Shown one piece after another: positions 5,214 through 51,752 of a stretch of DNA of 64,000 nt. The stretch covers positions 227,688-291,687 of the IMG/VR virus record IMGVR_UViG_3300042566_001780. One strand, 5' to 3'. Numbering within the stretch: position 1 is the stretch's first letter; each line of letters starts with the position of its first letter. The notes under the pieces were generated by a model. The model did not search any database, had not been told where the DNA came from, and saw nothing but the letters and a program-made list of their open reading frames with translations. The translations under genes and the position numbers were made by a program.

Positions 5214-6194
5214 ATGACAGTGAATGCACAAGCTATCAACCCAACCTTCGAGCTCAACGCAGATTACCAAAAAGCCATATCTGATCTCATGAATCATGGC
5301 TACGAATCTGCTCCCCGCGGCCAAAAGACCAAAGAAATCATCAACTATTCATTCTCGCTGGTCAACCCACGCAATCGAATTGTTCATTTTCCAGATCGTA
5401 AAACTAGTCTAAAGTACCTACTTGGTGAGTTTATCTGGTACATTTCCGGCAGTGCAGACCCAAAGGGTATTCTTCCCTATGCAAAATTCTGGGACTCTAT
5501 TCGCAATCCCGATGGTACAGTAAATTCCAACTATGGTACTCGATTGTTTGGTCATCATCAAGACAGTCTGGTGACACGCGATGGACAAAAGATGTCTCAA
5601 TGGCAAGCTGTCATTAATATCCTCACTAAGGATAACGATAGCCGTCAAGCTATCGTGAATATTCATATGCCCAGCGATCGCTGGGATGGGAATAAAGATG
5701 TTCCATGCACCATCTCGCTGCAATTCCTAATTCGTGATTGGCGTCTGCATATGATCGTCACTATGCGAAGTAATGATGTCATTATGGGTACTTCAAATGA
5801 CATCTTCCAGTTTACTATGCTGCAGGAAGCTTTGGCATTGGAGCTTCGTAAAACTATGCCTGCTTTGGAACTCGGTTATTACTACCATAACGCTGGGTCT
5901 CTCCATATCTACGAGCGTCACTTTGAAATGGCCAAAGGAATCATGGAAGATAATCGAAAGCTTGAGCTTTCAATGCGGCCAATGGATTCATTCTCGGATA
6001 ATGTGCTGACCGGATTGGTTGGTGTTGAAGCAGCTTGGCAACATGCTGGAGCACCCAAAGATTTTGACTTTGCTAAAGTTGGAGCATGGCAATTGCTAAC
6101 TCCATACTGGCAAGATCTCGTTTTGATGTGTTTTGCTGATGATCATTCTGCAATGCATCGAGTTTTTGCTATTCCGGAAGACGAGGAACATTGA
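5214..6194 (+). CDS. Thymidylate-synthase-fold dCMP hydroxymethylase/hydroxylase (T4 gp42-like)
   Basis: AAGGAG RBS then ATG 5214. DSRQA, PCTISLQFLIR, MRSNDVIMGTSND (Asp where dUMP-specific ThyA has Asn), GSLHIYERHF. A canonical thyA is present separately. Confidence 0.8.
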   Translation: MTVNAQAINPTFELNADYQKAISDLMNHGYESAPRGQKTKEIINYSFSLVNPRNRIVHFPDRKTSLKYLLGEFIWYISGSADPKGILPYAKFWDSIRNPDGTVNSNYGTRLFGHHQDSLVTRDGQKMSQWQAVINILTKDNDSRQAIVNIHMPSDRWDGNKDVPCTISLQFLIRDWRLHMIVTMRSNDVIMGTSNDIFQFTMLQEALALELRKTMPALELGYYYHNAGSLHIYERHFEMAKGIMEDNRKLELSMRPMDSFSDNVLTGLVGVEAAWQHAGAPKDFDFAKVGAWQLLTPYWQDLVLMCFADDHSAMHRVFAIPEDEEH

Positions 6195-6195
6195 A

Positions 6196-6462
6196 ATGTC
6201 AGGTGGATCCTTTGACTATGCTTATTACAAAATTTCAGATTTTGGTGATAGTCTTGAAGCTAAACTTCTTGCTTATGATCCAGATGATTGGAACACAGAA
6301 TTTGTCAAGTCACTGGATCCATCTACTGTAGCACTTTTGAAACAGATTGCTAAAGAAGCCCAAACGCTTGGACCAAAGGCAAGAGCAGTCGAATGGCTAT
6401 TTTCCGGTGACTATGGAGAGCAAACTTTTCTTGATGTCATTAGCAAAATTGAACAAAAATGA
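6196..6462 (+). CDS. Hypothetical protein (MSGGSFDY family)
   Basis: ATG 6196, coupled to neighbouring genes. Confidence 0.6.
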   Translation: MSGGSFDYAYYKISDFGDSLEAKLLAYDPDDWNTEFVKSLDPSTVALLKQIAKEAQTLGPKARAVEWLFSGDYGEQTFLDVISKIEQK

Positions 6463-8198
6463 ATTACGAAAAACAAATTCTTGAAGCTTATGATTTTCTA
6501 GGCTTCAAACCTCGGGGAAATCAGGTTGACAACATCAGTGAAATTGTAACAGCATTTCGAGATGATGGGTTTAGCTCTGTTACGTTATCCGCCCCAACTG
6601 GTACTGGTAAATCCATTATTGGTGCAGTAACAGCTGAAGTTTTGCATAAGCTCGAAAGTCCTGACCTCCATGTTGGTGCTAGCTTTCTGTTGTCACCAAC
6701 CAATATTCTTAGCGAGCAATATTTCAAGACCTTCCAAGAAGGCCGTGACCCTCTTGATACTCGATTTCGAATGATTAAAGGCGCAGCTAATTTCCCGTGC
6801 GCTGCACTTTCTACAGATACTGAGCCACAAACTGCAGAGATGTGCGCGCTTCGATTGTTCCAAAAGTCTGGTGAACAATCAATGATTGACACCTTTTGCA
6901 ATGGATGTGAATATGCATTGCAGAAACGACTGCGCGATCGTTCTCGCCACTTGATCACAAATTATGCATACTATTTCATTGATAGAATGTATACACAGAT
7001 GATGGCTAAAAGAACTGTTTGCGTATATGATGAAGCACATTTGATCAATGATCTTTTTACTGAGCACAATGCCATTTATGTCAGTGACTCTCGGTTAAAG
7101 AAGATGTCGGAAGAAATTCTTGCAAATCTTTCTATTAGCGATGTTGGTGTATTCAAAAAGATCAAAGATGTCACTAACCTCGTCAAAGAAGGTAAGGTGG
7201 CAAAATCCAATTACAAAGATGTGCTGCTAACTCTTGCAGAAGTTTATGGCATCGTAACTGAACTTGCTCAGAATGCTGCAGATGCAGCAGGAAATGATCA
7301 TAAGCGCTATATTGCCATGTCAAAGTTGTCCAAGAAATACTTTGGACTCGGTTGTAAAATTGGCGATTTGTTTGAATACAACTACGATCATGCATTTGAT
7401 TTCAAACCGGCCAATCCAAAATATAATCAATCTGAAAATGAGCTGAGTGTAAAGCCTATCTTTGTAGCTGACATGTTTGGGGTGCTGAATAATGCAAAGT
7501 ACAATTTGTTGATGTCTGGCACACTTGGCGAAGTTTATGCTAATCGTACTCTGACTCTAGAAAATAACAAACACATTCGCTTGGCACCAACTTTTCCAAC
7601 TGAGAATAAGAAGGTCGTATTCTACAAACCACAGGCATTAAGCAAAGATTCTCTGCAGTTGAATCAGGTAGCAACTAAACTAAAAGCTGCGTGCCAAGAG
7701 ATTGTCAAATATCATACTGACAAAAAAGAGCGAGGTATTATTTTGACTCCGTCATTTGCGTTGTCTGAAATGATTGCCGATATGATTTCAAAAGCAAATC
7801 TTCCAGTTAGAATTTTTGAACATCATAAAGGCGATAAACTTAGCCTTGCGCTGAACAGATTTAAAGATTATTCTGGTGGTCCAGCTGTTATGATCACTGC
7901 TTCTGGCTTTGAAGGCATGGACCTGCCTGGTGATTTGAGCCGCTATCAGATTTTAGTGAAAGCTCCGTATGCATCATTAGGAGAAGCACGTGTTAAATTG
8001 ATCTTGGAAAAATACCCAGATCTTTATAAGCTGCTTTGTCTAATGAAGATGGTGCAAGGTGCAGGTCGTAGTGTGCGTTCGCCGACTGACTATGCTACTA
8101 CGTACATCCTTGATTCAAATGCCCAGCGCATTTGGACTGATAAGATCAACGAGTGGCGTGATGAATTCTCTATCAGCTTCACCTCCATCCTAGAATGA
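6459..8198 (+). CDS. DinG/YoaA-like SF2 helicase with Fe-S-type cysteines
   Basis: APTGTGKS, DEAH, EGMDLPGD, QGAGRSVRS; four Cys in the N-terminal part. Confidence 0.88.
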   Translation: MNYEKQILEAYDFLGFKPRGNQVDNISEIVTAFRDDGFSSVTLSAPTGTGKSIIGAVTAEVLHKLESPDLHVGASFLLSPTNILSEQYFKTFQEGRDPLDTRFRMIKGAANFPCAALSTDTEPQTAEMCALRLFQKSGEQSMIDTFCNGCEYALQKRLRDRSRHLITNYAYYFIDRMYTQMMAKRTVCVYDEAHLINDLFTEHNAIYVSDSRLKKMSEEILANLSISDVGVFKKIKDVTNLVKEGKVAKSNYKDVLLTLAEVYGIVTELAQNAADAAGNDHKRYIAMSKLSKKYFGLGCKIGDLFEYNYDHAFDFKPANPKYNQSENELSVKPIFVADMFGVLNNAKYNLLMSGTLGEVYANRTLTLENNKHIRLAPTFPTENKKVVFYKPQALSKDSLQLNQVATKLKAACQEIVKYHTDKKERGIILTPSFALSEMIADMISKANLPVRIFEHHKGDKLSLALNRFKDYSGGPAVMITASGFEGMDLPGDLSRYQILVKAPYASLGEARVKLILEKYPDLYKLLCLMKMVQGAGRSVRSPTDYATTYILDSNAQRIWTDKINEWRDEFSISFTSILE

Positions 8199-8254
8199 TC
8201 TCGGTTCATTCTTCAAAGCAGTGTACAATTTCATTTTGAAATTAATGGAAACCT

Positions 8255-9430
8255 ATGTCGGAAGATATTGATGATTTTATAAGTGGGCTTTTGTCTTCTT
8301 CAAGACCATCAAAAAGCCAAAGATCTGGCATTCGAGGTATTCGTTCTGCAGATGAGCGAGCAGTTAAAACGCGAAGATATCGAACTGCGGGAATGTCAAA
8401 AATTGGTTTACCGACTGCGTTAGACGACCCACAATTTTTTAAGGCTGGTATGGAAAACAAAGACTCTGTTATTTTTGGTGCGTATGGTGTAGATGATTGG
8501 CTAAGCAGCACATTCCTGCAACAAAGCATTCGAGATGGTATTACGACCATCATGAAGTCCGGCACCTGGATTATTCCAGCTAACTGGGATTTTGTTACAT
8601 GGTGCGCTACTATTTCTCCACGGTACAACTTCATTAGCGCCAATCGTGCAATGATCTTTACAAATTGGGGCCAAATTGAAGTTGGTCTCGGCCGCCAAAA
8701 GATTGAAGTCGAGATCAACGGTAAAATCAAAGAAGTCAATCAGTTTATTGACTTGCTGCATACTCAGTTCAAGCAGGCAGAAAACCTAATTGAATGGGTC
8801 TATGGCCAACGCGGTGAAAGCATCAGCGTGCCACTGAATTACCGTCCTGCTATTAATGAGGCGTACCCTTGGATCAATGGTGGGCTCGACGCCTATATTG
8901 ATGCCTACATGAATTCTGATGCCAGTGTTCTTATTCTTATTGGGGCACCGGGAACTGGTAAGACAACGTTTGTTAAAAACCTTATCCATCGCTCTGGTGC
9001 AGATGCAAAGGTTACCTATGATGTCAACGTCATGCAGAGTGATGGCATCTTTGCGTCTTTCATTGAAGGTCGTGAAAAATTCATGATCATGGAAGATGCT
9101 GATGCCTTCCTCAAGAGTCGGGCTGATGGCAATACTATGATGCACCGTTTCCTGAACGTGTCAGATGGTCTCATCTCTGCATCAAATAAGAAGCTGGTGT
9201 TTAGCACGAATCTTCCATCGGTGCGTGATATTGATGATGCTCTTATGCGTCCAGGCCGGTGCTTTGATGTGATGGAGTTCCGACCTCTTACTCGAGATGA
9301 GGCTATTGCAGTGTGTGACAAGACTGGCCGTCCCCATCCAGGTGATGGTTCCAGTTTCACTCTTGCATCTCTCTTTGGGGATTCTCCAAATACTTCTAAA
9401 GTTAAAACGAAGAAAGTTGGTTTTGTGTAA
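8255..9430 (+). CDS. AAA+ ATPase
   Basis: GAPGTGKT, MIMEDAD, FSTN, DDALMRPGR. Confidence 0.88.
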   Translation: MSEDIDDFISGLLSSSRPSKSQRSGIRGIRSADERAVKTRRYRTAGMSKIGLPTALDDPQFFKAGMENKDSVIFGAYGVDDWLSSTFLQQSIRDGITTIMKSGTWIIPANWDFVTWCATISPRYNFISANRAMIFTNWGQIEVGLGRQKIEVEINGKIKEVNQFIDLLHTQFKQAENLIEWVYGQRGESISVPLNYRPAINEAYPWINGGLDAYIDAYMNSDASVLILIGAPGTGKTTFVKNLIHRSGADAKVTYDVNVMQSDGIFASFIEGREKFMIMEDADAFLKSRADGNTMMHRFLNVSDGLISASNKKLVFSTNLPSVRDIDDALMRPGRCFDVMEFRPLTRDEAIAVCDKTGRPHPGDGSSFTLASLFGDSPNTSKVKTKKVGFV

Positions 9431-9987
9431 TGAAGAACTTTATTATTGAAGGTCTCGATAGACTTGGTAAAGATACGCTGATTAAAAATATCCAGCACAA
9501 AACTGGATATAAGATGGTGTGTCATCGATCTAAGCCTCTTGCCCTTGATTATTATCGCAAAGAAAATAATAGTCTGCTTCGATTCCAACAAGAGTGTTTT
9601 GCAAATGATATGCGTCTTCTTTGGATGTCTGAAGATACATCGGCATTTGACGGTGTTATCTTCAATCGTTCGTGGTTAGGCGAATTTGTATATGCGCCCA
9701 TGTATCGGGGGTATTCTGCGGAATACATTTTCGATTATGAAAATGTATATTCTCTTGAGAAGCTCAAACAAACTACGCTCGTGCTTTTGACTGAAGATTT
9801 TTCTAAGTCAAAGCATTTTATTGATGATGGGTTGAGCTTCGATATTTCAAAGCGCGTAGAAGAACAAAATAGCTTTGAACTTGCATTTGAGCGTTCGCGA
9901 ATTCCTTGTAAGAAAAAGATTAGTGTTACTGCAGATAATGGCAGTTTCAAAGATCCACTTTCTATTTTGTCTGAAGTTTTTGTTTGA
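9430..9987 (+). CDS. Thymidylate-kinase-like dNMP kinase
   Basis: IIEGLDRLGKDT P-loop; FNRSWLGEFVYAPMYRGY. Confidence 0.75.
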   Translation: MKNFIIEGLDRLGKDTLIKNIQHKTGYKMVCHRSKPLALDYYRKENNSLLRFQQECFANDMRLLWMSEDTSAFDGVIFNRSWLGEFVYAPMYRGYSAEYIFDYENVYSLEKLKQTTLVLLTEDFSKSKHFIDDGLSFDISKRVEEQNSFELAFERSRIPCKKKISVTADNGSFKDPLSILSEVFV

Positions 9988-9998
9988 AGGAAAATGTC

Positions 9999-10442
9999 AT
10001 GTTGATTAATCAAATCAAAAAAGATCAAGTTGAAGCTCGCAAAAACAAAGATTCTGTGAAAGCCAATCTACTCACTACGCTAATTGGTGAAGCTGAAATG
10101 GTTGGCAAAAACAATGGCAACCGTGCTCCATCAGATGCTGAAGTACAAGTAGTAGTTAAGAAGTTCATTAAGGGAATTGATGAAATTCTGACTCTGACTT
10201 TTGACAAAGACATTCAGAATTTCTTGACTGAGCTAGAAATCCTCAAGTCATATTTGCCAGAACAGCTGAGCCAAGAGCAACTTGCATTTGAGATTAGCAA
10301 AATCATCGGCTCTCTTACTGTTGCAAATCCTTCTCAGGCAATTGGTGTTGTGATGAAGGAGCTTAATGCAAAGTTCTCTGGGAAATTTGATTCCAAACAA
10401 GCTTCCATTTTGATCAAAGAAAATCTGGTACCCCAATCATGA
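9999..10442 (+). CDS. YqeY/GatB domain protein
   Basis: IKKDQVEARKNKD, ELEILKSYLPEQLS, IGVVMKEL..KFD. Confidence 0.82.
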   Translation: MLINQIKKDQVEARKNKDSVKANLLTTLIGEAEMVGKNNGNRAPSDAEVQVVVKKFIKGIDEILTLTFDKDIQNFLTELEILKSYLPEQLSQEQLAFEISKIIGSLTVANPSQAIGVVMKELNAKFSGKFDSKQASILIKENLVPQS

Positions 10443-11077
10443 TCGTCTTTGGTCAACCCACGTTGATCACGTTAACCAGCCCATCTTGCGGTGGAAAAAG
10501 CTGGTTAATGGAGCATCTGATTGCTGAATGGAATTTTCAAAGAATCATCAGCACTACTGATAGAGCTCCACGAGTTGGAGAAGTCGACAAGGTGCATTAT
10601 TTCTTTATGACTACTGAAGAATCTAAGGAGCTAGAGAAGCAAAAGAAATTTGCTGAGCTAGTCACTTATAATGGCGTTCGTTATGGTGTTACTCATGACG
10701 AAATGGTTCGCAAAGTAGCAAAGCCAAATAGCGCTCCTCCTATTGTTATTCTTGAACCTTCTGGATTGAAGGAATACGAGAAGTATTGCAAGAAAAACAA
10801 TTGGAGAATGTTCAAGATCTTTGTTGACACTCCAGAAGAAATTCGCATTCTTAGACTCGCAGATCGCACAACAAAAGACATCATTGCTAAACCAAATGCT
10901 TCTTATGAAGAGGTCAAGCAATGCATAGTGTCAAACAATAGTCGGTTGCAGGCAATAATTGAAAAAGAGCGTTCTTGGTATAAGAAAAGTAACTGGGATT
11001 TGATTGTACCAGGCACTTCACTAAGCGATGCAAAACATCTTATTCTAGACGCAGCAAAAAGGTTTAACAATGATTGA
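10439..11077 (+). CDS. Guanylate kinase-like protein
   Basis: SPSCGGKS, STTDRAPRVGEVDKVHYFF, YNGVRYG. Confidence 0.82.
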   Translation: MIVFGQPTLITLTSPSCGGKSWLMEHLIAEWNFQRIISTTDRAPRVGEVDKVHYFFMTTEESKELEKQKKFAELVTYNGVRYGVTHDEMVRKVAKPNSAPPIVILEPSGLKEYEKYCKKNNWRMFKIFVDTPEEIRILRLADRTTKDIIAKPNASYEEVKQCIVSNNSRLQAIIEKERSWYKKSNWDLIVPGTSLSDAKHLILDAAKRFNND

Positions 11078-11582
11078 AGTTCAAGCGCCAAATAAGTTCA
11101 AAGTTAAGATGGCACACTGGACCGTTTTTCTTGCTGGGTCCATTGAAATGGGTGCTGCTGTTAAATGGCAAAATGAAGCTGTTGAGCAACTTAAACCATA
11201 CAATGATGAGTTGGTGTTGTTCAATCCTAGACGAGATGATTGGGATTCTTCTTGGGTTCAATCGATTGATAATCCCCAATTTGCTGAGCAAGTGAATTGG
11301 GAAATTGAACACATCACTAAATCAGACATTGTGTTCTTCTATTTTGCTGGTGACACAAAATCTCCAATCACTCTAATGGAGCTCGGCATTATTGCGGGAA
11401 TGCATATGCGATATGCGACATCAGATGTCATTGTTGTTTGTGAACCAAATTTTTGGCGAAAAGGAAATGTCGACATTCTCTGTGATACAATCAATGTACC
11501 GCTTTATGATAATCTAAAAGATGGTCTAAGTCATCTTGAAAATTATCTTGTCACTAATGGTGGGTTCATTCCTGGAGCGTGA
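11070..11582 (+). CDS. Nucleoside 2-deoxyribosyltransferase-like protein
   Basis: VFLAGSI, FNPRRDDWD, QVNWE, SPITLMELG. Confidence 0.8.
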   Translation: MIEVQAPNKFKVKMAHWTVFLAGSIEMGAAVKWQNEAVEQLKPYNDELVLFNPRRDDWDSSWVQSIDNPQFAEQVNWEIEHITKSDIVFFYFAGDTKSPITLMELGIIAGMHMRYATSDVIVVCEPNFWRKGNVDILCDTINVPLYDNLKDGLSHLENYLVTNGGFIPGA

Positions 11583-14107
11583 AATGGAAAAAGACGTCAA
11601 TGATAATCAAGGTAGAAATCCTGATCGACCAGCAAATGTAAAAACAGATTTGATTTCACTTGGTGTAGTTGCAGTGCTGATGGCTCTTTCTTACGGCATT
11701 ATCAAATTTTTTGAACTATGAGTGACTGTGACTTTCGAATCAAAGCTGAACATATTTGTGAAGATTGCGGACATGTTCAGATGGTTCATGGACTAGTAAC
11801 GTCTGACAATGGCGTCTATTTTGGCAGTGCCCATAATTGGTGTGATGTTTGTGATACGGGATTGCCGAAGTTTAGTTGGAAGATTGTTGTTCCCGCAGGG
11901 AACATTGACATCACCTTCTTCATGAAAGGTCTTCCGAAAAAGATGGCATTTCAAATCGGCAATCAAATTTTCACCTTGGACTATGAACCTGAAGAACCAT
12001 CTGAGTTTTTCTTTATGGCCAAAATGTTGACAAATGCTATGAAAAAGATTGGCGTAAACTAATGGGACGTCTTACTGATAATGACAAACGGTTTTGGATT
12101 TTTACATATGGAAAATCCAACTACAATCCTTGGAGAATGATTCTTTCAAGTGGCGGGGGCTATGATGAACCAGCAAAAACTAATCTGACTTGCTACGGAT
12201 TTGGTTATGTTTTTCGTGTTCATTTTCCAAATTTCATAAAACCTTTCCGTGAATGGCACGAATTTCGATTTGAGAAACTTGCAGATGGTAGAAAAGGTTA
12301 TTGGGAAGAGCATCCTCGAGAATTTGGTTTTTCTCTTGATGAAGGTTTCTTAACTTTCTATCATGGGCCACAAACTCATGACAGTATAACGACAAAATCA
12401 ACTAGCTTCTTTCTTCCGTGGACACAGTGGTTCTTCAATCGCTATAGCGTCTATGGTTTGAATGGCGAACATTTGAAAAGCTGGATTTCTGAACGAAGTT
12501 TGTTCAAGAAAAAGAAGCCGTTTAATGAGTATGAAGAACAACGACAGTTCAAAGATCAGCAGGTACCAAAAGCCAAGTTTTTGATTCACGATGCTGATGG
12601 TACTGCGGTTATTGCAACAACTTATATCCAAGAACGTGAATGGACGTTTGGAGAAGGCTGGTTTCAATGGCTTCGATTCTTCAAAAAGAATCTGGTACAA
12701 CGTACACTTGACATTGAATTTTCCCAAGAAGTCGGTCATGACAAAGGTTCATGGAAGGGCGGGTTGATGGGTACCTCGATTGAGATGAATCCAAATGACC
12801 TTCATGAATCTGCATTTAAGCGATTCTGCGACCAAGAACATCGTTCAAAGAATGGCAAGTTCAAGATAAAATTCATAAAACAAATCGAGGAGTAAGCAAT
12901 GCTAGTAGAAAAATTCAACGAAGTCAATAGTCACATTATCAATCTGCTTCTTCGTCACCGTGAAGAACGCGTCGACATCACCTATCAAGATGTTTTTGAC
13001 ATTCAACAACGGTTGGACAAATTGATTGTTGATGTTGCTGCGGCAGAAATTGTCATCAATGAGCTGGATGTGGCACCAAAGAAATCTTGTGGTGGCAACT
13101 GCTCTGAGTGTGCATGTCATTAATGAAATTCCCAGGCATTTTCATCAGTCATCATGGTTCAGCCGATATTGACGCGTTAAGCAAAGAAACCCATGAATGG
13201 GAAGTTCGAGCTTCTAAAGGTGAATGTGCCTGGATTTGTTCAGATTGTTGTGTCACTTTCCCAGATGGAATGCCTGCAAAATGCGAACATGGTCATGAAG
13301 GCTGTACCAAAATCATTGAAAGTTTCCGAAATGAAAAGTGATGCCCAAATTAGCTATGATTTAGCTTTAGCCATCGGTTGGACTAAAGCAGATTTGGTTA
13401 TTGCAGAAAACAAAGTTTTTGTTTGGCGCGGAAATAATTGGCGTGAATTCTCTTACACTGATCCCACAGTCATCTGGCCTATTGCTGTTCGCTTTAGAAA
13501 AATGCCAAGTGAAGTTTGGTACAGAGCTGCACCTAAGAAAGAATGGTATGTCGCAATGCCAGATGGTCCAGGTACTTGGTGTATGTATGCCGATTCCCCT
13601 GAAAAAGCAGTAGCTCTTGGGGTTATCTCAGAGGTCGCAGAATGAATTTGCCCAAACCAAAAGTCTTTGTGAAAAGTTCCGAGTGGAATGATGCTCTTCT
13701 CAAGAGATGTTCATTCAATGGATGGCGTCATGATTATGGTGATTGCGACATGCGGCTCTACACTGAAGAGCAATTGCATGAATTTGCAAAATCGCAAATT
13801 GAAGAAGTGCTAGGTTTAGTGTTCACTAATTTGGTCAACATTGCAAAAACCAAAGAATTGGCGAAAGACATAGACCAAACATGGTGCGCTGCAGCACAAG
13901 GCATGCATCGTTTGGCAAATGAAGCTTTGAAAAAAGTTGATCATCTTGAGCCAACTGAAAAAGCTTCTCCTGAAAAATTAGAAGAAGCTCTGGAAGAAGC
14001 TTATTGGATCTTCGATGCCAAACGAAAAGGTTATTCCATGTGGCACGACCCAATGTCTGAGCGTGATGCATTCAAAACCACTATTCGAAAATTGTTGAAA
14101 GATTCAA

Positions 14108-15535: not shown

Positions 15536-18300
15536 TTGAAACTATTCGTACCAATCTCATCAAGACCATTGAGGGCAAACAGCTCTATCTTGATGAAGTC
15601 ATCAAAGCTCGGCAACAAGCAAATGGCACTCTTGATGCAGTGTTTTTTGCTCAAGAAGAATTCCTGAAGATCAATATTGCCGAGCTCAATGCCATCCTTG
15701 ATGATGTTGAAAAGCTCATTCAACCGACAGCTCCATTTACTGGTGAAATCTTTCATCATCCGGTGTAATCATGGTTGAATGGGGCAAAATGTTCTTGCAA
15801 CTCGTGGTGCAAGAGAAAAGTAGCAATGATTATCGTGCTTTCTTGACCTGGCGCGATGTCGATAGTGATGGCATTTTTGAATTGCGGGGCTATGGCAAAG
15901 ATGGTGCCTTGGCTGCAGCCGATGCATGGCACAAATTTGTGACTGATGCCGAATTTCATAGCTACTGGTCAGGTCATTATTTGGAGCAGAAATCTCATGG
16001 TTGATCATTTGACAGTCATTCTCTATTTGTGGACCTCTGTTGTTGCAGCTGGGACCGCTTCTTCACTCAAAGTCGAGAAAGACTGGCGCCCAATTGGCGA
16101 GTATCATTCGTGGCAACGTGGTGGTCCTAGTGGAATGACACTATGTGAAAACGCGGCAAAGCAACTTGGTCTTGAGAAGACGCGTTATCGTTGCGTTATT
16201 TCAAAATGATTTCGAAAACTACTCGCCTTACTATTGCAAACATCTGCTATGCAAATGTGGCAGGTCAATTTGCATTGTTCAGCAACCCAAAGTTCCGTGG
16301 ACCAAACTTCACATGGAAAGAATTTCCAGCCATGTGTGAGAAGCAAGCGGATATTTGGATGATCCTCAACAGTGTACGTGGTAACAAAGAAGAAATCAAT
16401 AGTGTTGCTCGTCAAGTGGCAAAAGAAATTGCTACTACTTTGGTGTGGCATTTGGAGAAATGAAAATGGTACGAAAAGTGAAGCTCATTGATAGAAACAC
16501 GATGCTGGACTACAATGATGTAGACTACCATCATGATATGTTTATGGCTCTAGAGCGAGCCTCAAAACTGGGATGGACCTTTTCATGTCGTGATAATCAT
16601 GTTCGAATTGACAGGCATGACGGCGCTAGGAAAACGGAAATACCATGGAGCCTTGCATATGCAGTCTCGATCTATGGAGAAAATGATTTCGATGCTCCTA
16701 TTGAAGATCTCGAGCGTGCTATTGATTTCTGCGAACATGAGCGTCAAGAGGCAATCATTAAGACGCAAAAAATTAATGCTGCTTTGGCCAAATTGACTGA
16801 TGAAGAAAAGAAACTTTTAAAATTGTGAAGGAAATTATGTCTAAGAAAATTGCATTCTATGTGAATTTTGCTGTTAAGCAATCTGTGCTTAACTACATTG
16901 CCGAAAGCATGATTGAAACTCTTCTTGACGAAATTGACGATTTCTATGATGAAGACTTCTTAAAATTTGCCAACATAGATCTAGATGAGCTCGCAACCTC
17001 AATTGCTAATTTTGAACCGTTTCAAACGGCCTTCAAAAAAGAAATTGAAGATCTTGGAACGTGGGCTGTTGATGATCCCCATTGGATTTGGGGCCACAAA
17101 ATTCTCAAACATCCTGAATGGAAAAAGATTGTAAGCCATATCAAATTTATGGATAAAATCTATCAGGATATCGAGAAATCAGAAAATAGCAAAAACGAAA
17201 AGCAGAAAGCCGTTGATTCTGCTATTGATCTTTTGCAAAAATCTGGGTACACTGTTCTTAAGCAACCTAATTTTTGAAAATGAGCTGGAACAACGTAATC
17301 CCATGGTTCATCTATGAAATGCGTCGAGAGAAAGATGAAGCTATGATGTTAGGCGCAACTGCCGAAGAACTTAACTCTGGTTGGGTTCGAAGTTGTCCAA
17401 AGCAATTCATTCAAATGGATCTTAGTTTCAGCCGAAGAGAAGATCGAAAGCTCTATAGTTTGGGCGTGCAAATTTTTTGATGGCATTGTGGTTTTCATGA
17501 TGATTTTAGGTTAGAATAGCTTCATCACCAAAACAAACTTAAACATCATGAACCACTTTGCAAAATTTGAAAAAGCCCATCAAGAAGCTCTGGCGATGAT
17601 CCAGTCTTGTCTTGACAATGTTGATGAACCTGAGCTGCAGGCAATCACTAAGTACTTGCTTGAGACTGATGCAAATCCGTATAGCTTCTTGCCTGATGGT
17701 TGGGCGGGTTGTATGACGACGTCTACCGGTTTCCAAAGTCTTCTTCATATGATTCATCATGCACTGTATGATGACGGTGACATTAGCTTTCCGATCGTTA
17801 ACGGCGAACCTCGTATGTCCTTCGTTTGGAAAAATGAAGAGAACTATGCAAATGAGGTTCTTAATTCGACTGAAAAAGATTTTCAAAAACGGCGAGGAAA
17901 TGTCTATGAAGTTGAGCAATGCAAAGACATTTTTGACTTCATTGAAAAGCACAAAGAATACCATCGAAAAGACGTGAAGCGCTTTTTCATTATGGACGCA
18001 GTTATGCATGGTTGGGAATATTCTGTTGAACACAATTCCAAATACGCCAACTTCGATCCTGACTGGGAATTTGATGAAGAAGTGATTGCTGAAGTTGAGA
18101 AGAAGAAAGCATTGCGTGAAAAGATGGGTCTTGCTCTGAAAGGCCATTCCAAATGATGACACTTCAGTTGGTTTTGCTAGTACTCAACTCAATTGTCAGC
18201 TACAAGTGTTTTGTGAATGAATCTAGCTTTTGGGGTTGGGCAAATCTCGTAGCAAGTGCAAACATGTTTGCAAACATCATGGCCAAATTGGTCTGAAATC

Positions 18301-18870
18301 ATGCCAAAAATTCAAAACATTTCGAAGGCTGCAGCAAAATCCGGCAGCCATTTTTTCACTGGTGATAATTCCATACTGATCCAGATTGTGGATCCGGCCA
18401 CCGAGTTTCCAGTTCCTGCCCAAAAATTTCAAGAGATTCATCAATTTGAATTTCTGGATGTTGAAGATGACGGGGTCACAAACTTTGGTGATGGGCGTAT
18501 GGTGGACATGAGTGAGTTTGCCATTACCAAAGATCAAGCAAAACAGCTCGTGCAGATTTTGCAAAGTGCAAAAGAACGAGACATGAATGTCGTCGTTCAT
18601 TGTCATGCCGGGATTTGTCGTAGCGGGGCTGTGGTTGAAGTTGGCGTCATGATGGGTTTTGACGATCCAAAAGTATTTCGCAGCCCTAATCTGCTTGTCA
18701 AGCATGAGATGATGCGGGCACTTGGCTGGACTTATGATAGTGATGAACCTCATACCATCAACGGGCAACCTATTGCCATGGAGTGGAATTCATTTGTTGA
18801 CAAAGTTTGGTTTTTGAGAGAAGCGCGTAGGCATCACAATGAATCTCAAGAACGTGAAGGAGATGTTTGA
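18301..18870 (+). CDS. Protein tyrosine/dual-specificity phosphatase-like protein
   Basis: VVHCHAGICRS (HCx5R) and FLD acid loop. Confidence 0.8.
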   Translation: MPKIQNISKAAAKSGSHFFTGDNSILIQIVDPATEFPVPAQKFQEIHQFEFLDVEDDGVTNFGDGRMVDMSEFAITKDQAKQLVQILQSAKERDMNVVVHCHAGICRSGAVVEVGVMMGFDDPKVFRSPNLLVKHEMMRALGWTYDSDEPHTINGQPIAMEWNSFVDKVWFLREARRHHNESQEREGDV

Positions 18871-36544: not shown

Positions 36545-37579
36545 ATGTCAAAAATTCTGATTACCGGCATGAATAAGCTTCAATGCACTGAAGACTTTTA
36601 TCTTGACCAACATTTGAAAGTCGTCCCGTCGCATTACTCTCTCATTCGCGCTCTTCGAGATATGGGGCATACTGTTGAGCAACGAATTGTGATGATAGGC
36701 GAAAATCTATCTGAATACGATCATGTAATTGTGTATATCCATAATCCTGCAGGGTTTGCCGGATTTGTATACAATGCCCTGTATACCATTTACACCCGGC
36801 CTGATTGCATTTTGGCATTTGATGATTGGCAAGTTGATAGCATTTATTCTGGTCTACTGTCTCTGAAAGATCCAGAAAAACTGTTTCGATCGTATGTTAA
36901 GGATGGGCATAAACACATTCCCGATCATATTGAAGATTACGAATCAATGATGATGAAAGCGCTCGACATCATTGATTCAAAAACTAACCGAATGATGATT
37001 TCGGCTTTTGCTGGCGGTGATCTTTCTAAGTTGATCGAATATCCAAGTAATCGCATTTTTAGTTATAATCCCAACCCGTATCATTTGAATCGACAGGGTG
37101 TCAAAGTAATCCCTGAAAATAAACAGAAAGTCTTTAACTTTGCTGGGCTGGTACAGGGCAAAACCGCCAGGTGGCTCAAATCCCAAAAGATTGGTGACAC
37201 TGGCTGGGATCTAAAAATGTATGGTTCCCGTAAAGATGGCCAAGACCGCGTCACTGAAGATGTGATGGTGAATATCTATGGGGAGCAATGGGGCATTTTA
37301 ATGCCGGGATATTTCCATGCCGGGTCGGGGTGGTGGAGGGCCCGTCCCCTACAGTCAGCCGATGCTGGTTCTATTTTGATTGGTGAATTTGCTGAAATGA
37401 TGGTTCTTTACCAAGATGAAGGTGCTGCTACGGTAAAGCCAGTTGATCTGATTAATCTTTCTACTAACGAACTTGCAGAGATTGCTGCTTATCAAAAAGA
37501 ATGCCTGTACAAAGCACATCCTTTGGATAAGAATGTCGAAAAAGAAGAACTCAATACCATTTTGAAGGCAGTAGTGTAA
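36545..37579 (+). CDS. Putative glycosyltransferase (GT-B-like), candidate nucleotide/DNA-modifying enzyme
   Basis: KILITG N-terminal strand, FNFAG, W+G.LMP.Y....SGWWRAR..Q..DAGSILI resembling a GT-B C-terminal domain; first gene of a sugar-nucleotide operon. Confidence 0.5.
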   Translation: MSKILITGMNKLQCTEDFYLDQHLKVVPSHYSLIRALRDMGHTVEQRIVMIGENLSEYDHVIVYIHNPAGFAGFVYNALYTIYTRPDCILAFDDWQVDSIYSGLLSLKDPEKLFRSYVKDGHKHIPDHIEDYESMMMKALDIIDSKTNRMMISAFAGGDLSKLIEYPSNRIFSYNPNPYHLNRQGVKVIPENKQKVFNFAGLVQGKTARWLKSQKIGDTGWDLKMYGSRKDGQDRVTEDVMVNIYGEQWGILMPGYFHAGSGWWRARPLQSADAGSILIGEFAEMMVLYQDEGAATVKPVDLINLSTNELAEIAAYQKECLYKAHPLDKNVEKEELNTILKAVV

Positions 37580-38593
37580 ATGAAAATTCTAGTTGTCGGC
37601 GCTGGTTTTTCTGGTGCGGTTATTGCTCGTGAACTGGCAGAAGCAGGTCATAATATTACTGTCATTGACAAGCGGGGTCATATTGCAGGAAATGCATTTG
37701 ACTTTAAAAATGACTATGGCATTCGTGTGCACAAGTATGGGCCTCATCTTTTTCATACAAATAATGAAACAGTGTTTGCCTATCTTAGCAAATTTACAAC
37801 ATGGATCCCGTATGAGCATAAAGTAAAAGCTATGTTAGCAGATGGCAGATATGTTACATTGCCCGTGAATAAAGAAACTGCTGAGATTGTAGGAAAAGAA
37901 AACATTGTCGATATTTTTATTCGCCCATATACTAAAAAAATGTGGGGGATGAGTATTGAGGAACTTGATCCTGAGATTCTACAGCGAGTTCCTATTCGTG
38001 ACGATATGAATGACAAATACTTTCCAAATGATCAATTCCAGTTTATGCCAGAAAATGGATATACTGAACTAATTAGGCAAATGCTACATCACGAAAATAT
38101 TTCTGTGCTGTTGGGCAAACCTTTTAGCAAGAAGTTGGAAGATGAATTTGATCACATCTTCAATTCAATGCCAATCGATGAGTATTACGATTTTTGTTAT
38201 GGCGAACTGCCATATCGATCTATCAAGTTTCATACTGTGGACCTCCCTGCTCCTAAGCTTTTGCCAACAACTACAGTAAACTTCACTCACAGCGGACCTT
38301 ATACTCGAGTTACTGAGTGGAAGAACATTCCAGGTCATGGAACAAATGATCAAATGACAACCTTAACTTTTGAGGAACCATGCGATTATTTGGACAATAA
38401 TAAAGAACGGTACTATCCGGTCAAAGATGCCTCTGGGAAAAATAGAGAAATCTATAAAAAGTATGAAGGTATTCTGAACGCGAAGACTACCTTTATTGGT
38501 AGATGCGGACTTTATGCTTACTTAGATATGCACATGGCAGTCAGTACCGCTTACTCCATTGCTAAACGATTTTTGAAAGAGCGAAATGGCTGA
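37580..38593 (+). CDS. glf: UDP-galactopyranose mutase family flavoenzyme
   Basis: VVGAGFSG, HKYGPHLFHT, YTKKMWG, LPYRS, YTRVTEWK, YYP, GRCGLYAYLDM. Confidence 0.9.
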   Translation: MKILVVGAGFSGAVIARELAEAGHNITVIDKRGHIAGNAFDFKNDYGIRVHKYGPHLFHTNNETVFAYLSKFTTWIPYEHKVKAMLADGRYVTLPVNKETAEIVGKENIVDIFIRPYTKKMWGMSIEELDPEILQRVPIRDDMNDKYFPNDQFQFMPENGYTELIRQMLHHENISVLLGKPFSKKLEDEFDHIFNSMPIDEYYDFCYGELPYRSIKFHTVDLPAPKLLPTTTVNFTHSGPYTRVTEWKNIPGHGTNDQMTTLTFEEPCDYLDNNKERYYPVKDASGKNREIYKKYEGILNAKTTFIGRCGLYAYLDMHMAVSTAYSIAKRFLKERNG

Positions 38594-38873
38594 TTTTATT
38601 CTGGTAGCGCAATCATTTCATAAAAATGCAGCAATTGCAGAAGTGCTAAATAAACGTGCAAAAGATGATCGAGTGATTGTTGTCACGAACAAAGAAGACG
38701 ATTCTAAATGGGAAGTTTTCTTTGAGCGTGTTTGTAAATGCTCAGTCTATCAATTCAGTCTTAGTGAAGAACTTCCGAAAACTCTGGAAGAAGCTTCTAA
38801 AAAGCTGAAAGACTTTCATCCCACGCAATTCACCCTAAACCAAGAATGTGTTTTTCTATATGATCCTGAATGA
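38586..38873 (+). CDS. Hypothetical protein in the sugar operon
   Basis: Overlaps both neighbours. Confidence 0.55.
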   Translation: MADFILVAQSFHKNAAIAEVLNKRAKDDRVIVVTNKEDDSKWEVFFERVCKCSVYQFSLSEELPKTLEEASKKLKDFHPTQFTLNQECVFLYDPE

Positions 38874-39327
38874 ATTGAAAAAACTGCAAGGCAAAAAAAT
38901 TGGATTTGTAGCAAGTTGTTTTGACTTGCTGCACGCAGGTCATGTAGCCATGCTTAGTGAAGCAAAGAATCATTGTGATTTTTTGATTGCTGCATTGCAA
39001 GTAGATCCGTGTGTTGATCGGCCACACAAAAATAAGCCAGTACAAAGCATAGTTGAGCGGCAACTACAGCTAGCATCATGTAGATTTGTGGATGACATCA
39101 TCATTTACCATACAGAAAAGGATCTAGAAGATCTTCTGCTGATTCTGCCTATAGATGTGCGTATTCTCGGCGTCGAATATCAGGATCTAGAATTCACCGG
39201 TAGACAAATTTGCATTGATCACGGAATTGAGCTTGTTTTCAATTCGCGAAATCATTCTTTTAGTTCAAGCGGTTTGCGGAAGCGTGTGCTTGAAGCTGAG
39301 CAAAAAGCTGCGACAAAAGTAGATTAA
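38860..39327 (+). CDS. Cytidylyltransferase (TagD/RfaE-II-like HxGH nucleotidyltransferase)
   Basis: CFDLLHAGH, KPVQSIVER, RNHSFSSSGLR. Confidence 0.87.
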   Translation: MILNELKKLQGKKIGFVASCFDLLHAGHVAMLSEAKNHCDFLIAALQVDPCVDRPHKNKPVQSIVERQLQLASCRFVDDIIIYHTEKDLEDLLLILPIDVRILGVEYQDLEFTGRQICIDHGIELVFNSRNHSFSSSGLRKRVLEAEQKAATKVD

Positions 39328-44722: not shown

Positions 44723-44779
44723 CATTTTTTGTCTCCTTCTATAAATATGAATATATTTTACTGAAGGAGACAAAAAATG
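44723..44779 (+). promoter_or_regulatory. Late promoter TATAAATA (44740-44747) inside a 17-bp inverted repeat that masks the endonuclease RBS and ATG
   Basis: CATTTTTTGTCTCCTTC (44723-44739) is the exact reverse complement of GAAGGAGACAAAAAATG (44763-44779). Confidence 0.85.
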
Positions 44780-45886: not shown

Positions 45887-45887
45887 T

Positions 45888-46331: not shown

Positions 46332-46373
46332 ACTTTGACGGTTATTGCTAAATACATTTTTGAAAGGATAAAA

Positions 46374-47990: not shown

Positions 47991-47995
47991 AAATT

Positions 47996-50380: not shown

Positions 50381-50891
50381 TGACATTTCAGGTATTTCTT
50401 TTTCGCAAAAGAAATTGGTGAAAGTTATTTCTGGAGGTCAGACTGGTGTAGACCAAGCTGGTCTTTTTGCCGCTATTTCTTGCGGATTGGAAACCGGTGG
50501 GCAAGCTCCTGAAAACTATTTAACCAGTGCAGGCAATTTCCCAATGTTAGAATTATTTGGATTGACTGCCGATGGAAATTACTATGAGCGCACTGGGGCT
50601 AATGTCAAAAATTCCGATGGTACTATCATTATTGCGGAAGATTTGACCTCTGCAGGTTCTAGCGCCACAAGGCGCTTTTGCGCTCGAATAAATAAACCAT
50701 GCTTAGAAATCGAATTACAAAATTTGACCTTCACTACAGCTCATGTGATTGAAATTTGCGAATTCATCACTGCTAAAGAAATTTCAATTTTGAACGTCGC
50801 CGGGAATCGAGAGCGCTACAAAAATAATGCAGTTTTTTCTTGCGCAAAAAAATTGTTGACAGAAGTTTTCACCACACTTAAGCAATTATGA
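50373..50891 (+). CDS. SLOG / putative molybdenum-carrier-like protein
   Basis: [31 protein letters not shown]. Confidence 0.82.
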
Positions 50892-51751
50892 CTTCACAAA
50901 CTTTCGAATATAATCTCCTCAACCTGTATCATGACATTCTTCAGAATGGCGATGAGCGAATTGATCGCACGGGCGTAGGCACTCTTTCAGTTTTTGGTCG
51001 ACAACTTCGAATCAATCTTCAAGATGGATTTCCGTTAGTCACTACTAAGAAGATGGGATTTAAGTCCATTCTGGCAGAACTTCTTTGGTTCATTGAAGGT
51101 AGCTGCGATGAGCGCCGCCTTGCAGAAATTCTACATGGGACACGTGATGTGTCCAAGAAAACTATCTGGACTGCAAATGCCGAAGCTCCATACTGGAAGT
51201 CTAAAGCAAATTTTGAAGGTGATTTAGGTCGCGTGTATGGTGTGCAATGGCGTACATGGCATGGTCATGATGATGTTTATGTTGATCAACTCCAAAATAT
51301 CATTAATACCCTCAAGACAGACCCAACAAATCGCCGCATGATTTTATCTGCATGGAACGTAGGTGAGCTTGACATGATGGCACTTCCGCCGTGCCATATG
51401 TTTGCGCAGTTTTTTGTGTCACAGAAAAAACTGTCATGTCAAATGTATCAGCGCTCAGTTGATAGTTTCTTAGGTCTCCCATATAACATCTCATCTTATG
51501 CACTGCTCACGCATATCATTGCAAAGATCTGTGATCTAGAAGCTGGTGAGCTTATTATGTGTCTTGGCGATACTCACATCTACAAGAATCACATTGACCA
51601 AGTCAAACAACAAATTGCTCGTACGCCATTTGAATTGTCGAAGCTTTCTATTTCTGATAGCATAAAAAGTCTTGATGATCTGAAGATGGAACATTTTTCT
51701 ATTACTGATTATCAATATCATCCTGCTATAGTTGCTGAAATGGCAGTGTGA
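50888..51751 (+). CDS. thyA: Thymidylate synthase
   Basis: DRTGVGT, YGVQWR, MALPPCH, YQRSVD.FLGLPYN, GDTHIY.NH. Confidence 0.95.
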   Translation: MTSQTFEYNLLNLYHDILQNGDERIDRTGVGTLSVFGRQLRINLQDGFPLVTTKKMGFKSILAELLWFIEGSCDERRLAEILHGTRDVSKKTIWTANAEAPYWKSKANFEGDLGRVYGVQWRTWHGHDDVYVDQLQNIINTLKTDPTNRRMILSAWNVGELDMMALPPCHMFAQFFVSQKKLSCQMYQRSVDSFLGLPYNISSYALLTHIIAKICDLEAGELIMCLGDTHIYKNHIDQVKQQIARTPFELSKLSISDSIKSLDDLKMEHFSITDYQYHPAIVAEMAV

Positions 51752-51752
51752 A

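What the first reader, a model, noticed from the sequence alone, without database searches (positions are those of the whole stretch)
5214..11582. Second thymidylate-synthase homologue with a cytosine-specificity residue, plus nucleotide-pool enzymes
MRSNDVIMGTSND has Asp at the position that is Asn in the canonical thyA at 50888 (GLPYN), as in T4 dCMP hydroxymethylase. The same region encodes a dNMP kinase, a guanylate kinase and an N-deoxyribosyltransferase-like protein. These could phosphorylate the modified dCMP and remove unmodified or unwanted nucleotides. Hydroxymethylase versus hydroxylase cannot be decided by eye.
Basis: partly seen in the sequence, partly recalled or inferred. Interest (0 to 1): 0.6.

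Follow-up and report, generated by a model that had tools for sequence, protein, structure and literature searches.

The report
Jumbo-phage dCMP hydroxymethylase pathway
An uncultured giant phage carries, besides its normal thymidylate synthase, a second copy whose active site has every residue known to mark a dCMP hydroxymethylase (not a hydroxylase or methylase), with its own nucleotide kinases and a sugar-transfer module, so it most likely replaces cytosine in its DNA by sugar-decorated 5-hydroxymethylcytosine, as phage T4 does.

Summary
ORF 5214-6194 is a thymidylate-synthase homologue with Asp where the window's canonical ThyA (50888-51751) has Asn. It has an acid at Cys-3 (L143 equivalent), it keeps D169, which is Asn in the flavin-dependent 5-hydroxy-dCMP synthases, and it has Ser/Arg where MilA's ribose-preferring Ala/Lys lie. 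All seven tabulated active-site positions are invariant in 119 family members from uncultured, mostly jumbo phages. This predicts a 5-hydroxymethyl-dCMP synthase.

Downstream, in conserved order, lie a thymidylate-kinase-fold NMP kinase, a YqeY protein, a guanylate-kinase-like kinase and a PF15891 N-ribosyl-hydrolase/transferase-like protein. In relatives, the slot between the two kinases holds either a true T4 beta-glucosyltransferase homologue or an unannotated GT-B protein plus UDP-galactopyranose mutase. This window has the second cassette at 36545-38593. Elsewhere the genome has a dCMP deaminase and an all-alpha NTP pyrophosphatase.

It is a T-even-type pathway built from different families: a new variant of a known kind. 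Enzyme activities, the sugar and the DNA content are inferred, not shown.

The parts
5214..6194 (+). Thymidylate-synthase homologue (326 aa), predicted 5-hydroxymethyl-dCMP synthase. It has a roughly 80-aa C-terminal extension of unknown role that is conserved in the family.
   Evidence: PF00303 9.6e-29. Best PDB matches: MilA 8e-32, T4 dCH 5e-19. Signature Asp(Cys-3)/Cys/Arg/Ser/Asn/Asp169/Asp177 is invariant in 119 sequences. SD plus ATG.
6196..6462 (+). Small ORF (88 aa) of unknown function. It is found again by tblastn only in two relatives.
   Evidence: Weak match to phrog_6724 at 6.5e-5. tblastn hits only in L013 and L016.
6459..8198 (+). DinG/XPD-like SF2 helicase. It always follows the TS homologue but is probably a replication/repair gene, not a nucleotide-pool gene.
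   Evidence: PF13307 7e-18, phrog_2488 3e-72. Present in all close relatives with enough flank.
8255..9430 (+). AAA-type ATPase with an unknown N-terminal half; conserved in synteny.
   Evidence: PF00004 1.9e-9, phrog_14322 4e-61.
9430..9987 (+). Thymidylate-kinase-fold NMP kinase (185 aa), the candidate 5hm-dCMP (and possibly dTMP) kinase.
9984..10442 (+). YqeY/GatB-C-like protein of unknown role. Present in this slot in about a third of relatives.
   Evidence: PF09424 6e-17.
10439..11077 (+). Guanylate-kinase-like P-loop kinase (212 aa), probably a (d)GMP kinase.
   Evidence: PF00625 1.1e-14. TIGR03263 scores 65 bits against a 160-bit cut-off. Yeast GK 1.1e-10, with most GMP-site residues aligned. 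Present in 18 relatives' loci.
11070..11582 (+). PF15891 nucleoside-2-deoxyribosyltransferase-like protein (170 aa), predicted (d)NMP N-glycosidase or phosphodeoxyribosyl-transferase; substrate unknown.
   Evidence: PF15891 7.7e-30. PDB 4mcj (uncharacterised) 3.6e-26. Invariant FLAGSIE, NPRR, WE and SPI..E.G motifs. The family is mostly viral. Found after the GK-like gene in 7 relatives.
36545..37579 (+). Unannotated 344-aa protein with a GT-B glycosyltransferase fold, the candidate DNA (5hmC) glycosyltransferase.
37580..38593 (+). UDP-galactopyranose mutase (337 aa). This is a shortened form lacking about 65 aa of the helical domain.
   Evidence: PF03275 2e-54. PDB 3hdq 4e-77. Deletion seen in alignment A6.
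38848..39327 (+). Cytidylyltransferase-like protein (159 aa). It travels with the GT-B/UGM cassette in some relatives.
   Evidence: PF01467 3.8e-8. PDB: ethanolamine-phosphate and glycerol-3-phosphate cytidylyltransferases, 1e-15 and 1e-8. Also in L022/L023 and L003.
50888..51751 (+). Canonical thymidylate synthase ThyA, the comparator (Leu at Cys-3, D169, N177).
   Evidence: PF00303 1.8e-100.

Best explanation
The window is the last 64 kb of a 291.7-kb uncultured jumbo-phage contig. ORF 5214-6194 is most likely a folate-dependent dCMP hydroxymethylase that makes 5-hydroxymethyl-dCMP before replication. The proposed pathway is as follows, and only the sequence and fold assignments in it are shown; every activity, the sugar and the DNA composition are inferred.

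1. The thymidylate-kinase-fold kinase (9430-9987) phosphorylates the modified nucleotide.
2. The guanylate-kinase-like enzyme (10439-11077) boosts dGDP supply. Together the two would cover the substrates of the single T4 gp1 kinase.
3. Host NDP kinase and the phage polymerase put 5hmC into DNA.
4. An all-alpha NTP pyrophosphatase (genome 173604-174113) and a dCMP deaminase (genome 113127-113579), with ThyA, would handle dCTP/dUTP and dTMP supply as in T4.
5. The PF15891 protein (11070-11582) would clean the pool by cleaving an unwanted dNMP.
6. After replication, the GT-B protein (36545-37579) transfers a sugar to the hydroxymethyl group, probably galactofuranose from UDP-Galf made by the adjacent mutase (37580-38593).
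For: Residue signature:
- Catalytic Cys, Asp at Cys-3, Arg166, Ser167, Asp169 and Asp at the N177 position are invariant in 119 family members.
- The same columns sort my controls correctly: ThyA L/D/N, T4-type dCH D/D/D, RB69 5-hydroxy-dCMP synthase E/N/D, two phage homologues with the dUMP-hydroxymethylase signature (from the ViI-like and M6-like groups) D/D/N, Xp12 homologue N/D/D.
- The meaning of these residues comes from PMC13326640.
- MilA's ribose determinants Ala176 and Lys133' are Ser and Arg here.

Gene context:
- TS-helicase-AAA-kinase is syntenic in every close relative with enough flank.
- The slot before the GK-like gene holds a T4 beta-glucosyltransferase homologue (PDB 1bgt 1.2e-31) in 10 loci, or the GT-B protein and/or UGM in 8 loci. 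The two are never found together.
- The GT-B+UGM pair also occurs in Aeromonas phage Aes508, whose gene-42 homologue has the hydroxymethylase signature.
- The kinase fold matches that reported for RB69p045 in a cytosine-hypermodification cluster.
- dCMP deaminase and the NTP-PPase.
Against: - No activity was measured.
- The diagnostic residues come from a limited set of characterised enzymes, and my methylase control is a single sequence.
- The deep tree is unresolved, and the family does not group with T4 gp42. The nearest solved relative is the CMP enzyme MilA.
- The family replaces the second phosphate-binding Arg (R127) by Gln and has an unexplained C-terminal extension.
- In this genome the GT-B/UGM cassette lies 25 kb from the cluster. 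The UGM lacks about 65 residues. No UDP-glucose 4-epimerase was found.
- The NTP-PPase is only weakly similar to known dUTP/dCTPases.
- The contig is about 82% complete.
Confidence: 0.72

Rival explanations
1. It is a flavin- and O2-dependent 5-hydroxy-dCMP synthase, as in RB69, DLP3 and RL38J1, and the sugars are attached by an ether bond to 5-hydroxycytosine.
For: It has the same two substitutions (N177D and an acid at L143). Similar cluster logic is reported for such phages: a Tmk-like kinase, a GT-B enzyme, and a UDP-galactopyranose mutase in RL38J1.
Against: The only residue reported as unique to these enzymes, D169N, is absent from all 119 family members, while RB69 gp48 shows it in the same alignment. 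Sister clusters carry true homologues of T4 BGT, whose known acceptor is 5hmC.
Confidence: 0.08
2. It is a dCMP methyltransferase that makes 5-methyl-dCMP, as in Xanthomonas phage Xp12.
For: Asp at N177 and a retained D169 fit a dCMP methylase too. The Xp12 homologue reads N/D/D.
Against: Cys-3 is Asp, as in hydroxymethylases. It is Asn in Xp12 and Leu in ThyA. The C-terminus differs from TS. Glycosyltransferase cassettes in the cluster need a hydroxyl acceptor.
Confidence: 0.05
3. It is a MilA/MilB-like pair: a CMP hydroxymethylase plus an N-glycosidase that releases free 5-hydroxymethylcytosine or feeds a small-molecule or RNA pathway, not DNA.
For: MilA is the best solved match (8e-32) and has a similar length. 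An NDT-superfamily gene lies in the same operon-like run. MilB is an NDT-family hmCMP hydrolase (PMC4081090).
Against: MilA's two ribose-preference residues are in the deoxy state, Ser and Arg. The NDT-like gene was found within the fetched flank of only 7 relatives, and many flanks end near where it would lie, whereas the kinases are near-universal. DNA glycosyltransferase homologues sit in the cluster. The PF15891 profile shows no sequence link to MilB in the PDB.
Confidence: 0.05
4. It is a dUMP-directed enzyme: a second thymidylate synthase or a dUMP hydroxymethylase.
For: It belongs to PF00303. Distant homologues L044 and L050 do carry Asn at this position.
Against: Asp at the N177 position is invariant in the family. 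Phage homologues from two groups known for 5-hydroxymethyl-dU-derived DNA, and ThyA, have Asn. A canonical ThyA is already present.
Confidence: 0.03

Closest known systems
T4 gp42 dCMP hydroxymethylase and the T-even hmC pathway (gp42, gp1 dNMP kinase, gp56 dCTPase, cd, td, alpha/beta-glucosyltransferases)
   Same: The active-site signature is the same (Asp at Cys-3, MRSND, Asp at N177). It coexists with a canonical ThyA, a dCMP deaminase, an all-alpha NTP-PPase, dedicated kinases and a GT-B glycosyltransferase.
   Different: Similarity to gp42 is only remote (5e-19) and it does not group with gp42 in the tree. It is about 80 aa longer, and R127 is Gln. Two separate kinases of Tmk and GK type stand in place of gp1. 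It has an extra NDT-like enzyme. This genome has no beta-GT homologue but has a different GT-B family plus UDP-galactopyranose mutase.
MilA, CMP 5-hydroxymethylase of mildiomycin biosynthesis (PDB 5jnh, 5b6d), with MilB
   Same: It is the best solved sequence match (8e-32), has a similar length, and shares Asp at both the L143 and N177 positions.
   Different: MilA's Ala176 and Lys133', which give its preference for CMP, are Ser and Arg here, as in dCMP/dUMP enzymes. The setting is a phage replication cluster, not an antibiotic gene cluster.
5-hydroxy-dCMP synthases of RB69 (gp48), DLP3 and RL38J1, with their arabinosyl/galactosyl clusters (PMC13326640)
   Same: The cluster design is the same: TS homologue, Tmk-fold nucleotide kinase, GT-B transferase(s) and sugar-nucleotide genes, including a UDP-galactopyranose mutase in RL38J1.
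   Different: The D169N signature is absent, so the predicted acceptor is hydroxymethyl, not hydroxyl.
GT-B DNA glycosyltransferases that decorate 5hmC with diverse sugars in metaviromes (bioRxiv 10.1101/2023.12.21.572611)
   Same: It has a GT-B fold with T4 BGT as structural neighbour at Foldseek E about 1e-5 to 1e-6. It is associated with a cytidylyltransferase and with a TS homologue.
   Different: That work tested enzymes paired with methyltransferase/TET. Galactofuranose and a mutase are not mentioned there. I did not test whether the 344-aa family is related to theirs.
DmtZ (Z-genome phages), DNPH1/Rcl and MilB: NDT-superfamily dNMP/NMP N-glycosidases
   Same: DmtZ, a phage NDT-superfamily enzyme next to nucleotide-pool genes, removes a canonical nucleotide (dAMP). 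DNPH1 removes hm-dUMP.
   Different: The window protein is PF15891, whose only solved member (4mcj) is uncharacterised. No sequence link to DNPH1 or MilB was found in the PDB search. Its substrate is unknown.

Membership tests
Thymidylate synthase superfamily (PF00303) | Significant match to the family profile over the catalytic core | tested here: met
   9.6e-29, 100.8 bits against a 24.3-bit cut-off, residues 17-248.
Thymidylate synthase superfamily (PF00303) | Catalytic Cys (E. coli C146), Arg166, Glu58, Tyr94 and His207/Tyr209 equivalents | tested here: met
   Cys165 and Arg185 are invariant. E72, Y107, H231 and Y233 are invariant in A2.
Bona fide thymidylate synthase (ThyA equivalog) | Score above the NCBIfam equivalog cut-off; Asn at position 177; hydrophobic residue at 143 | tested here: not met
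   Best score is 67.7 bits against a 327-bit cut-off. It has Asp at 177 and Asp at Cys-3.
dCMP hydroxymethylase (T4 gp42 type, by function) | Asp at the N177 position (cytosine specificity) | tested here: met
   D196, invariant in 119 sequences. The residue's role is given in PMC13326640 and PMC5175136.
dCMP hydroxymethylase (T4 gp42 type, by function) | Acidic residue at the L143 position (Cys-3), which correlates with a hydroxymethyl rather than a methyl product | tested here: met
   D162, invariant. Controls: ThyA Leu, Xp12 Asn, T4 dCH Asp.
dCMP hydroxymethylase (T4 gp42 type, by function) | Deoxyribose preference residues (Ser167, Arg126') | tested here: met
   MRSND and DSRQ motifs. The rule comes from the MilA mutants.
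dCMP hydroxymethylase (T4 gp42 type, by function) | Formation of 5hm-dCMP from dCMP and CH2-THF | not testable with these tools
   Needs an enzyme assay or LC-MS.
T4 gp42 orthologous group (by descent) | Groups with gp42 in a tree, or has close sequence similarity to it | tested here: inconclusive
   phmmer against T4 dCH gives 5e-19, weaker than MilA. In the quick IQ-TREE the deep nodes are open and the branches long.
5-hydroxy-dCMP synthase (RB69 gp48 type) | Asn at the D169 position | tested here: not met
   Asp in all 119 members; RB69 gp48 shows Asn in the same alignment.
MilA-type CMP hydroxymethylase | Ala at the TS-S167 position and Lys at the TS-R126' position | tested here: not met
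   Ser and Arg here.
Guanylate kinase (for ORF 10439-11077) | Score above the equivalog cut-off; GMP-site residues | tested here: inconclusive
   TIGR03263 scores 64.9 bits against 160.45. In the alignment to yeast GK, the equivalents of S34, R38, R41, E44, Y50, E69 and Y78 are kept, S80 is Val and D100 is Glu (residue roles are from memory of the yeast GK structure).
Thymidylate kinase / dNMP kinase fold (for ORF 9430-9987) | P-loop NMP-kinase fold with a Tmk-like EGxDxxGK motif | tested here: met
T4 beta-glucosyltransferase family PF09198 (for ORF 36545-37579) | Sequence membership in PF09198 | tested here: not met
Nucleoside 2-deoxyribosyltransferase-like PF15891 (for ORF 11070-11582) | Profile match and a conserved Glu in the E-x-G motif | tested here: met
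   7.7e-30. E104 and G106 are invariant in 6 sequences. That this Glu is the nucleophile is by analogy with NDT/DNPH1 and was not tested.

The most novel reading that the evidence does not exclude
Two phage groups attach galactofuranose to 5-hydroxymethylcytosine in their DNA: this clade of uncultured jumbo phages and, independently, T4-like Aeromonas phages of the Aes508/phiAS4/25 group. They would use a previously unannotated GT-B family (the 344-aa protein, about 700 database relatives) fed by a phage UDP-galactopyranose mutase. This two-gene cassette would be interchangeable with a T4-type beta-glucosyltransferase at one fixed slot of the hydroxymethylase cluster. That would make it a swappable 'sugar module' giving a DNA modification not yet described.
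Probability: 0.35. Interest if true: 0.6.

Novelty: new variant of a known kind. Interest (0 to 1): 0.45.

Why it matters
- It extends the T-even strategy (pre-replicative dCMP hydroxymethylation, then glycosylation) to a large and so far uncharacterised clade of environmental jumbo phages. These use a distinct, longer, MilA-like branch of the TS family.
- It gives a worked example of calling hydroxymethylase, hydroxylase or methylase from four active-site residues.
- It points to a candidate new DNA glycosyltransferase family with a furanose donor. This can be tested at once in cultured Aeromonas phages and could be useful as a 5hmC-labelling enzyme.
- The phage-typical PF15891 family gains a concrete hypothesis: a pool sanitiser in base-replacing phages.
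- Such modifications decide sensitivity to restriction, to CRISPR and to type IV modification-dependent nucleases.

Tried and rejected
- Megablast of the region against 50,697 phage records found nothing. The best tblastn hit was Ralstonia jumbo phage RsoM2USA at 36% identity, annotated only as hypothetical.
- Pfam MazG (PF03819) and dUTPase (PF00692) searches of the genome were blank. A phmmer screen with a phage NTP-PPase then found a PF01503-type protein. RB69 gp56 itself found nothing.
- PF09198 searches through the genome search cannot be used as evidence of absence, because the same search was blank on a Tequatrovirus control. Absence in this contig rests on a protein search and a local profile search. 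Absence in Aes508 is untested.
- hhalign of the GT-B family against the true BGT homologues gave no signal.
- BLASTP of the 185-aa kinase against RB69p045 was not significant; only the fold agrees.
- A PDB profile search for the NDT-like protein reached only 4mcj. The Atlas search returned only PF15891 clusters.
- The careful tree did not finish, so only the quick tree was used, and its deep nodes are unresolved. MilA could not be put in the alignment or tree because no referenced sequence was on hand; its residues were read from the PDB alignment.
- No Epimerase (PF01370) gene was found in the contig.
- The big representative search, complex prediction and other genetic codes were not needed.
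- Literature searches for PF15891 and for 'UDP-galactopyranose mutase' with 'Aeromonas phage' returned no papers.
Full report
**Setting.** The window is the last 64 kb of a single 291,687-bp IMG/VR virus contig, rated linear and about 82% complete. It has about 40% G+C, tail-fibre-like genes and a long run of replication genes, so it is an uncultured jumbo phage. No phage record is close at the DNA level.

**The observation.** ORF 5214-6194 starts at an ATG preceded by AAGGAG. It matches PF00303 at 9.6e-29 and phrog_160 'thymidylate synthase' at 8e-48. It falls far below every NCBIfam thymidylate-synthase equivalog cut-off (68 against 327 bits). A canonical ThyA lies at 50888-51751 (1.8e-100), and these are the only two PF00303 genes in the contig. 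In a MAFFT alignment the final Asp of MRSNDVIMGTSND stands on the Asn of ThyA's GLPYN and on the Asp of a T4-type dCMP hydroxymethylase.

**Which chemistry.** A 2026 paper (PMC13326640) gives residues, in E. coli numbering, that track substrate and product in phage TS homologues:
- C146 is catalytic.
- N177D marks dCMP use.
- L143D/E marks a hydroxymethyl rather than a methyl product.
- D169N is the mark of the newly found flavin/O2-dependent 5-hydroxy-dCMP synthases.

The window protein reads D-V-P-C (Asp at Cys-3), M-R-S-N-D (D169 kept) and Asp at position 177. I checked that these columns sort known enzymes:

| Enzyme | Cys-3 / 169 / 177 |
|---|---|
| Window ThyA | L / D / N |
| T4-type dCH | D / D / D |
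| RB69 gp48 (5hoC synthase) | E / N / D |
| ViI-like and Ab18 homologues (dUMP-hydroxymethylase signature; from phage groups known for 5hmdU-derived DNA) | D / D / N |
| Xp12 homologue (phage with 5-methyl-C DNA) | N / D / D |
| Aes508 gene-42 homologue | D / D / D |

The window protein therefore carries the hydroxymethylase pattern, not the hydroxylase or methylase pattern.

The best solved match is MilA, a CMP hydroxymethylase (8e-32, against 5e-19 for T4 dCH). MilA's preference for ribose rests on Ala176 and Lys133', and the double mutant to Ser/Arg uses dCMP only (PMC5175136). The window protein has Ser and Arg there. All seven tabulated positions are invariant in 119 family members.

**The family.** The word search returned 792 proteins at E<=1e-10, and the best 120 are 52-100% identical. 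Many sit on contigs of 150-370 kb, and none has a name beyond 'thymidylate synthase'. A quick tree puts the window protein in a well-supported clade of 24 sequences, apart from all references. The deep nodes are unresolved, so descent from gp42 or a MilA-like ancestor cannot be told. The family has two traits I cannot explain. The second phosphate-binding Arg (R127) is always Gln, and there is a conserved C-terminal extension of about 80 aa.

**The neighbours.** The genes from 9430 to 11582 overlap by 1-8 bases, like an operon.
- **ORF 10439-11077** is guanylate-kinase-like. It is below the equivalog cut-off but keeps most GMP-site residues.
- **ORF 11070-11582** is PF15891. This is a mostly viral family whose only solved member is uncharacterised. 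The Glu of an E-x-G motif is invariant.
- **The helicase, AAA ATPase and YqeY genes** in between are conserved in order but look like replication or unknown functions.

**Context in relatives.** I fetched 39 loci around family members and searched them with the window's proteins.
- TS-helicase-AAA-kinase is present in every close relative with enough flank. The kinase still sits beside the TS homologue at 38% TS identity (L041).
- The GK-like gene follows in 18 loci, and the PF15891 gene follows it in 7 loci.
- Between the two kinases there is a variable slot. Ten loci hold a homologue of T4 DNA beta-glucosyltransferase (PF09198; PDB 1bgt 1.2e-31).
- Seven loci hold an unannotated protein of about 390 aa followed by UDP-galactopyranose mutase. 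An eighth locus (L031) holds the mutase alone.
- The two kinds never co-occur, and they interleave on the TS tree.

The beta-glucosyltransferase homologue supports 5hmC as the DNA base in this clade.

**This genome's sugar module.** The contig has no BGT homologue. It has the other cassette 25 kb downstream:
- ORF 36545-37579 is 54% identical to the L003 protein.
- UDP-galactopyranose mutase lies at 37580-38593 (PF03275 2e-54; PDB 3hdq 4e-77).
- A cytidylyltransferase-like gene lies at 38848-39327.

Homologues at 29% identity occur in T4-like Aeromonas phages. In Aes508 the gene is adjacent to a 'putative UDP-galactopyranose mutase', and that phage's gene-42 homologue has the hydroxymethylase signature. 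I infer that this protein is a DNA glycosyltransferase using UDP-galactofuranose.

Three points weaken this inference. The window's mutase lacks about 65 residues of the helical domain. No epimerase gene was found. GT-B similarity alone shows no function.

**Rest of the pathway.** Outside the window, the contig has a dCMP deaminase (C1:113127-113579, PF00383 1.4e-23). It also has an all-alpha NTP pyrophosphatase (C1:173604-174113; PF01503 8.7e-9; DR2231 dUTPase-like 1.5e-4). The latter is a candidate for the dCTPase/dUTPase role of T4 gp56.

For the PF15891 protein the best precedents are three NDT-superfamily enzymes: DmtZ, which destroys dAMP in Z-genome phages (PMC12884076); DNPH1, which destroys hm-dUMP; and MilB, which cleaves hmCMP. 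Removal of hm-dUMP formed by the phage's own deaminase, or of a canonical dNMP, are both possible. I cannot choose between them.

**Verdict.** The open point is resolved, on sequence evidence, in favour of a hydroxymethylase. The system works like the T-even pathway but is assembled from different families and has a swappable sugar cassette. I rate it a new variant of a known kind, of moderate interest. All activities, the identity of the sugar and the actual DNA composition remain to be shown. No sequence was taken for human, and no genetic code other than table 11 was needed.

Noticed in passing
window 12062-12895 (+): Directly downstream of the cluster lies a strong match to PF25187 'CBASS inhibitor Acb3' (5.9e-56), a likely anti-defence gene.
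   Followed up: no
window 31626-32861 (+): A TnpB/IS605 OrfB-type protein with HTH, OrfB_IS605 and Cas12f1-like TNB domains lies in a low-GC stretch (0.36-0.38). It is probably a mobile element inside the phage genome.
   Followed up: no
window 44777-47423 (+): A low-GC island (0.31-0.33) holds three ORFs without Pfam hits. It lies between the GyrB-like (42942-44714) and GyrA/ParC-like (47987-49336) topoisomerase genes. It may be an insertion.
   Followed up: no
window 50352-50891 (+): A circularly permuted YpsA SLOG-family protein (PF12694, 1.3e-31) overlaps the start of canonical ThyA. It is a second nucleotide-binding protein of unknown role next to a TS gene. The ORF after ThyA (51732-52262) has no Pfam or NCBIfam hit.
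   Followed up: no
window 37580-38593 (+): The UDP-galactopyranose mutase is 337 aa and lacks about 65 residues of the helical domain that relatives of 398-420 aa have. The Aes508 copy is also short at 354 aa.
   Followed up: partly
L003 16183-20990; L013 574-5323: Relatives carry extra sugar genes. L003 has an NDP-sugar epimerase and a PP-binding carrier protein inside the cluster. L013 has Gly_transf_sug, Glyco_transf_25 and an epimerase upstream of the tail fibre. In L013 the AAA gene is called as two pieces, with a faint intein hit.
   Followed up: no
L043, L044, L050 (TS homologues at about 10001-10760): More distant homologues show other signatures. L043 has Asn at Cys-3 like Xp12, so it is a possible dCMP methylase. 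L044 and L050 have Asn at 177 (dUMP type) and group in the tree with the two references that carry the dUMP-hydroxymethylase signature.
   Followed up: partly
window 18256-18870, 23141-23779, 41162-41629, 52916-54082: These ORFs are a dual-specificity phosphatase-like protein, a Lar-like restriction-alleviation protein, a Macro domain protein and a T4-type RNA ligase.
   Followed up: no
The genome search with PF09198: The family search for T4-Gluco-transf was blank on a Tequatrovirus record used as a positive control. Either that phage lacks beta-gt or the tool's first look misses this family. Blanks from it should not be read as absence.
   Followed up: partly
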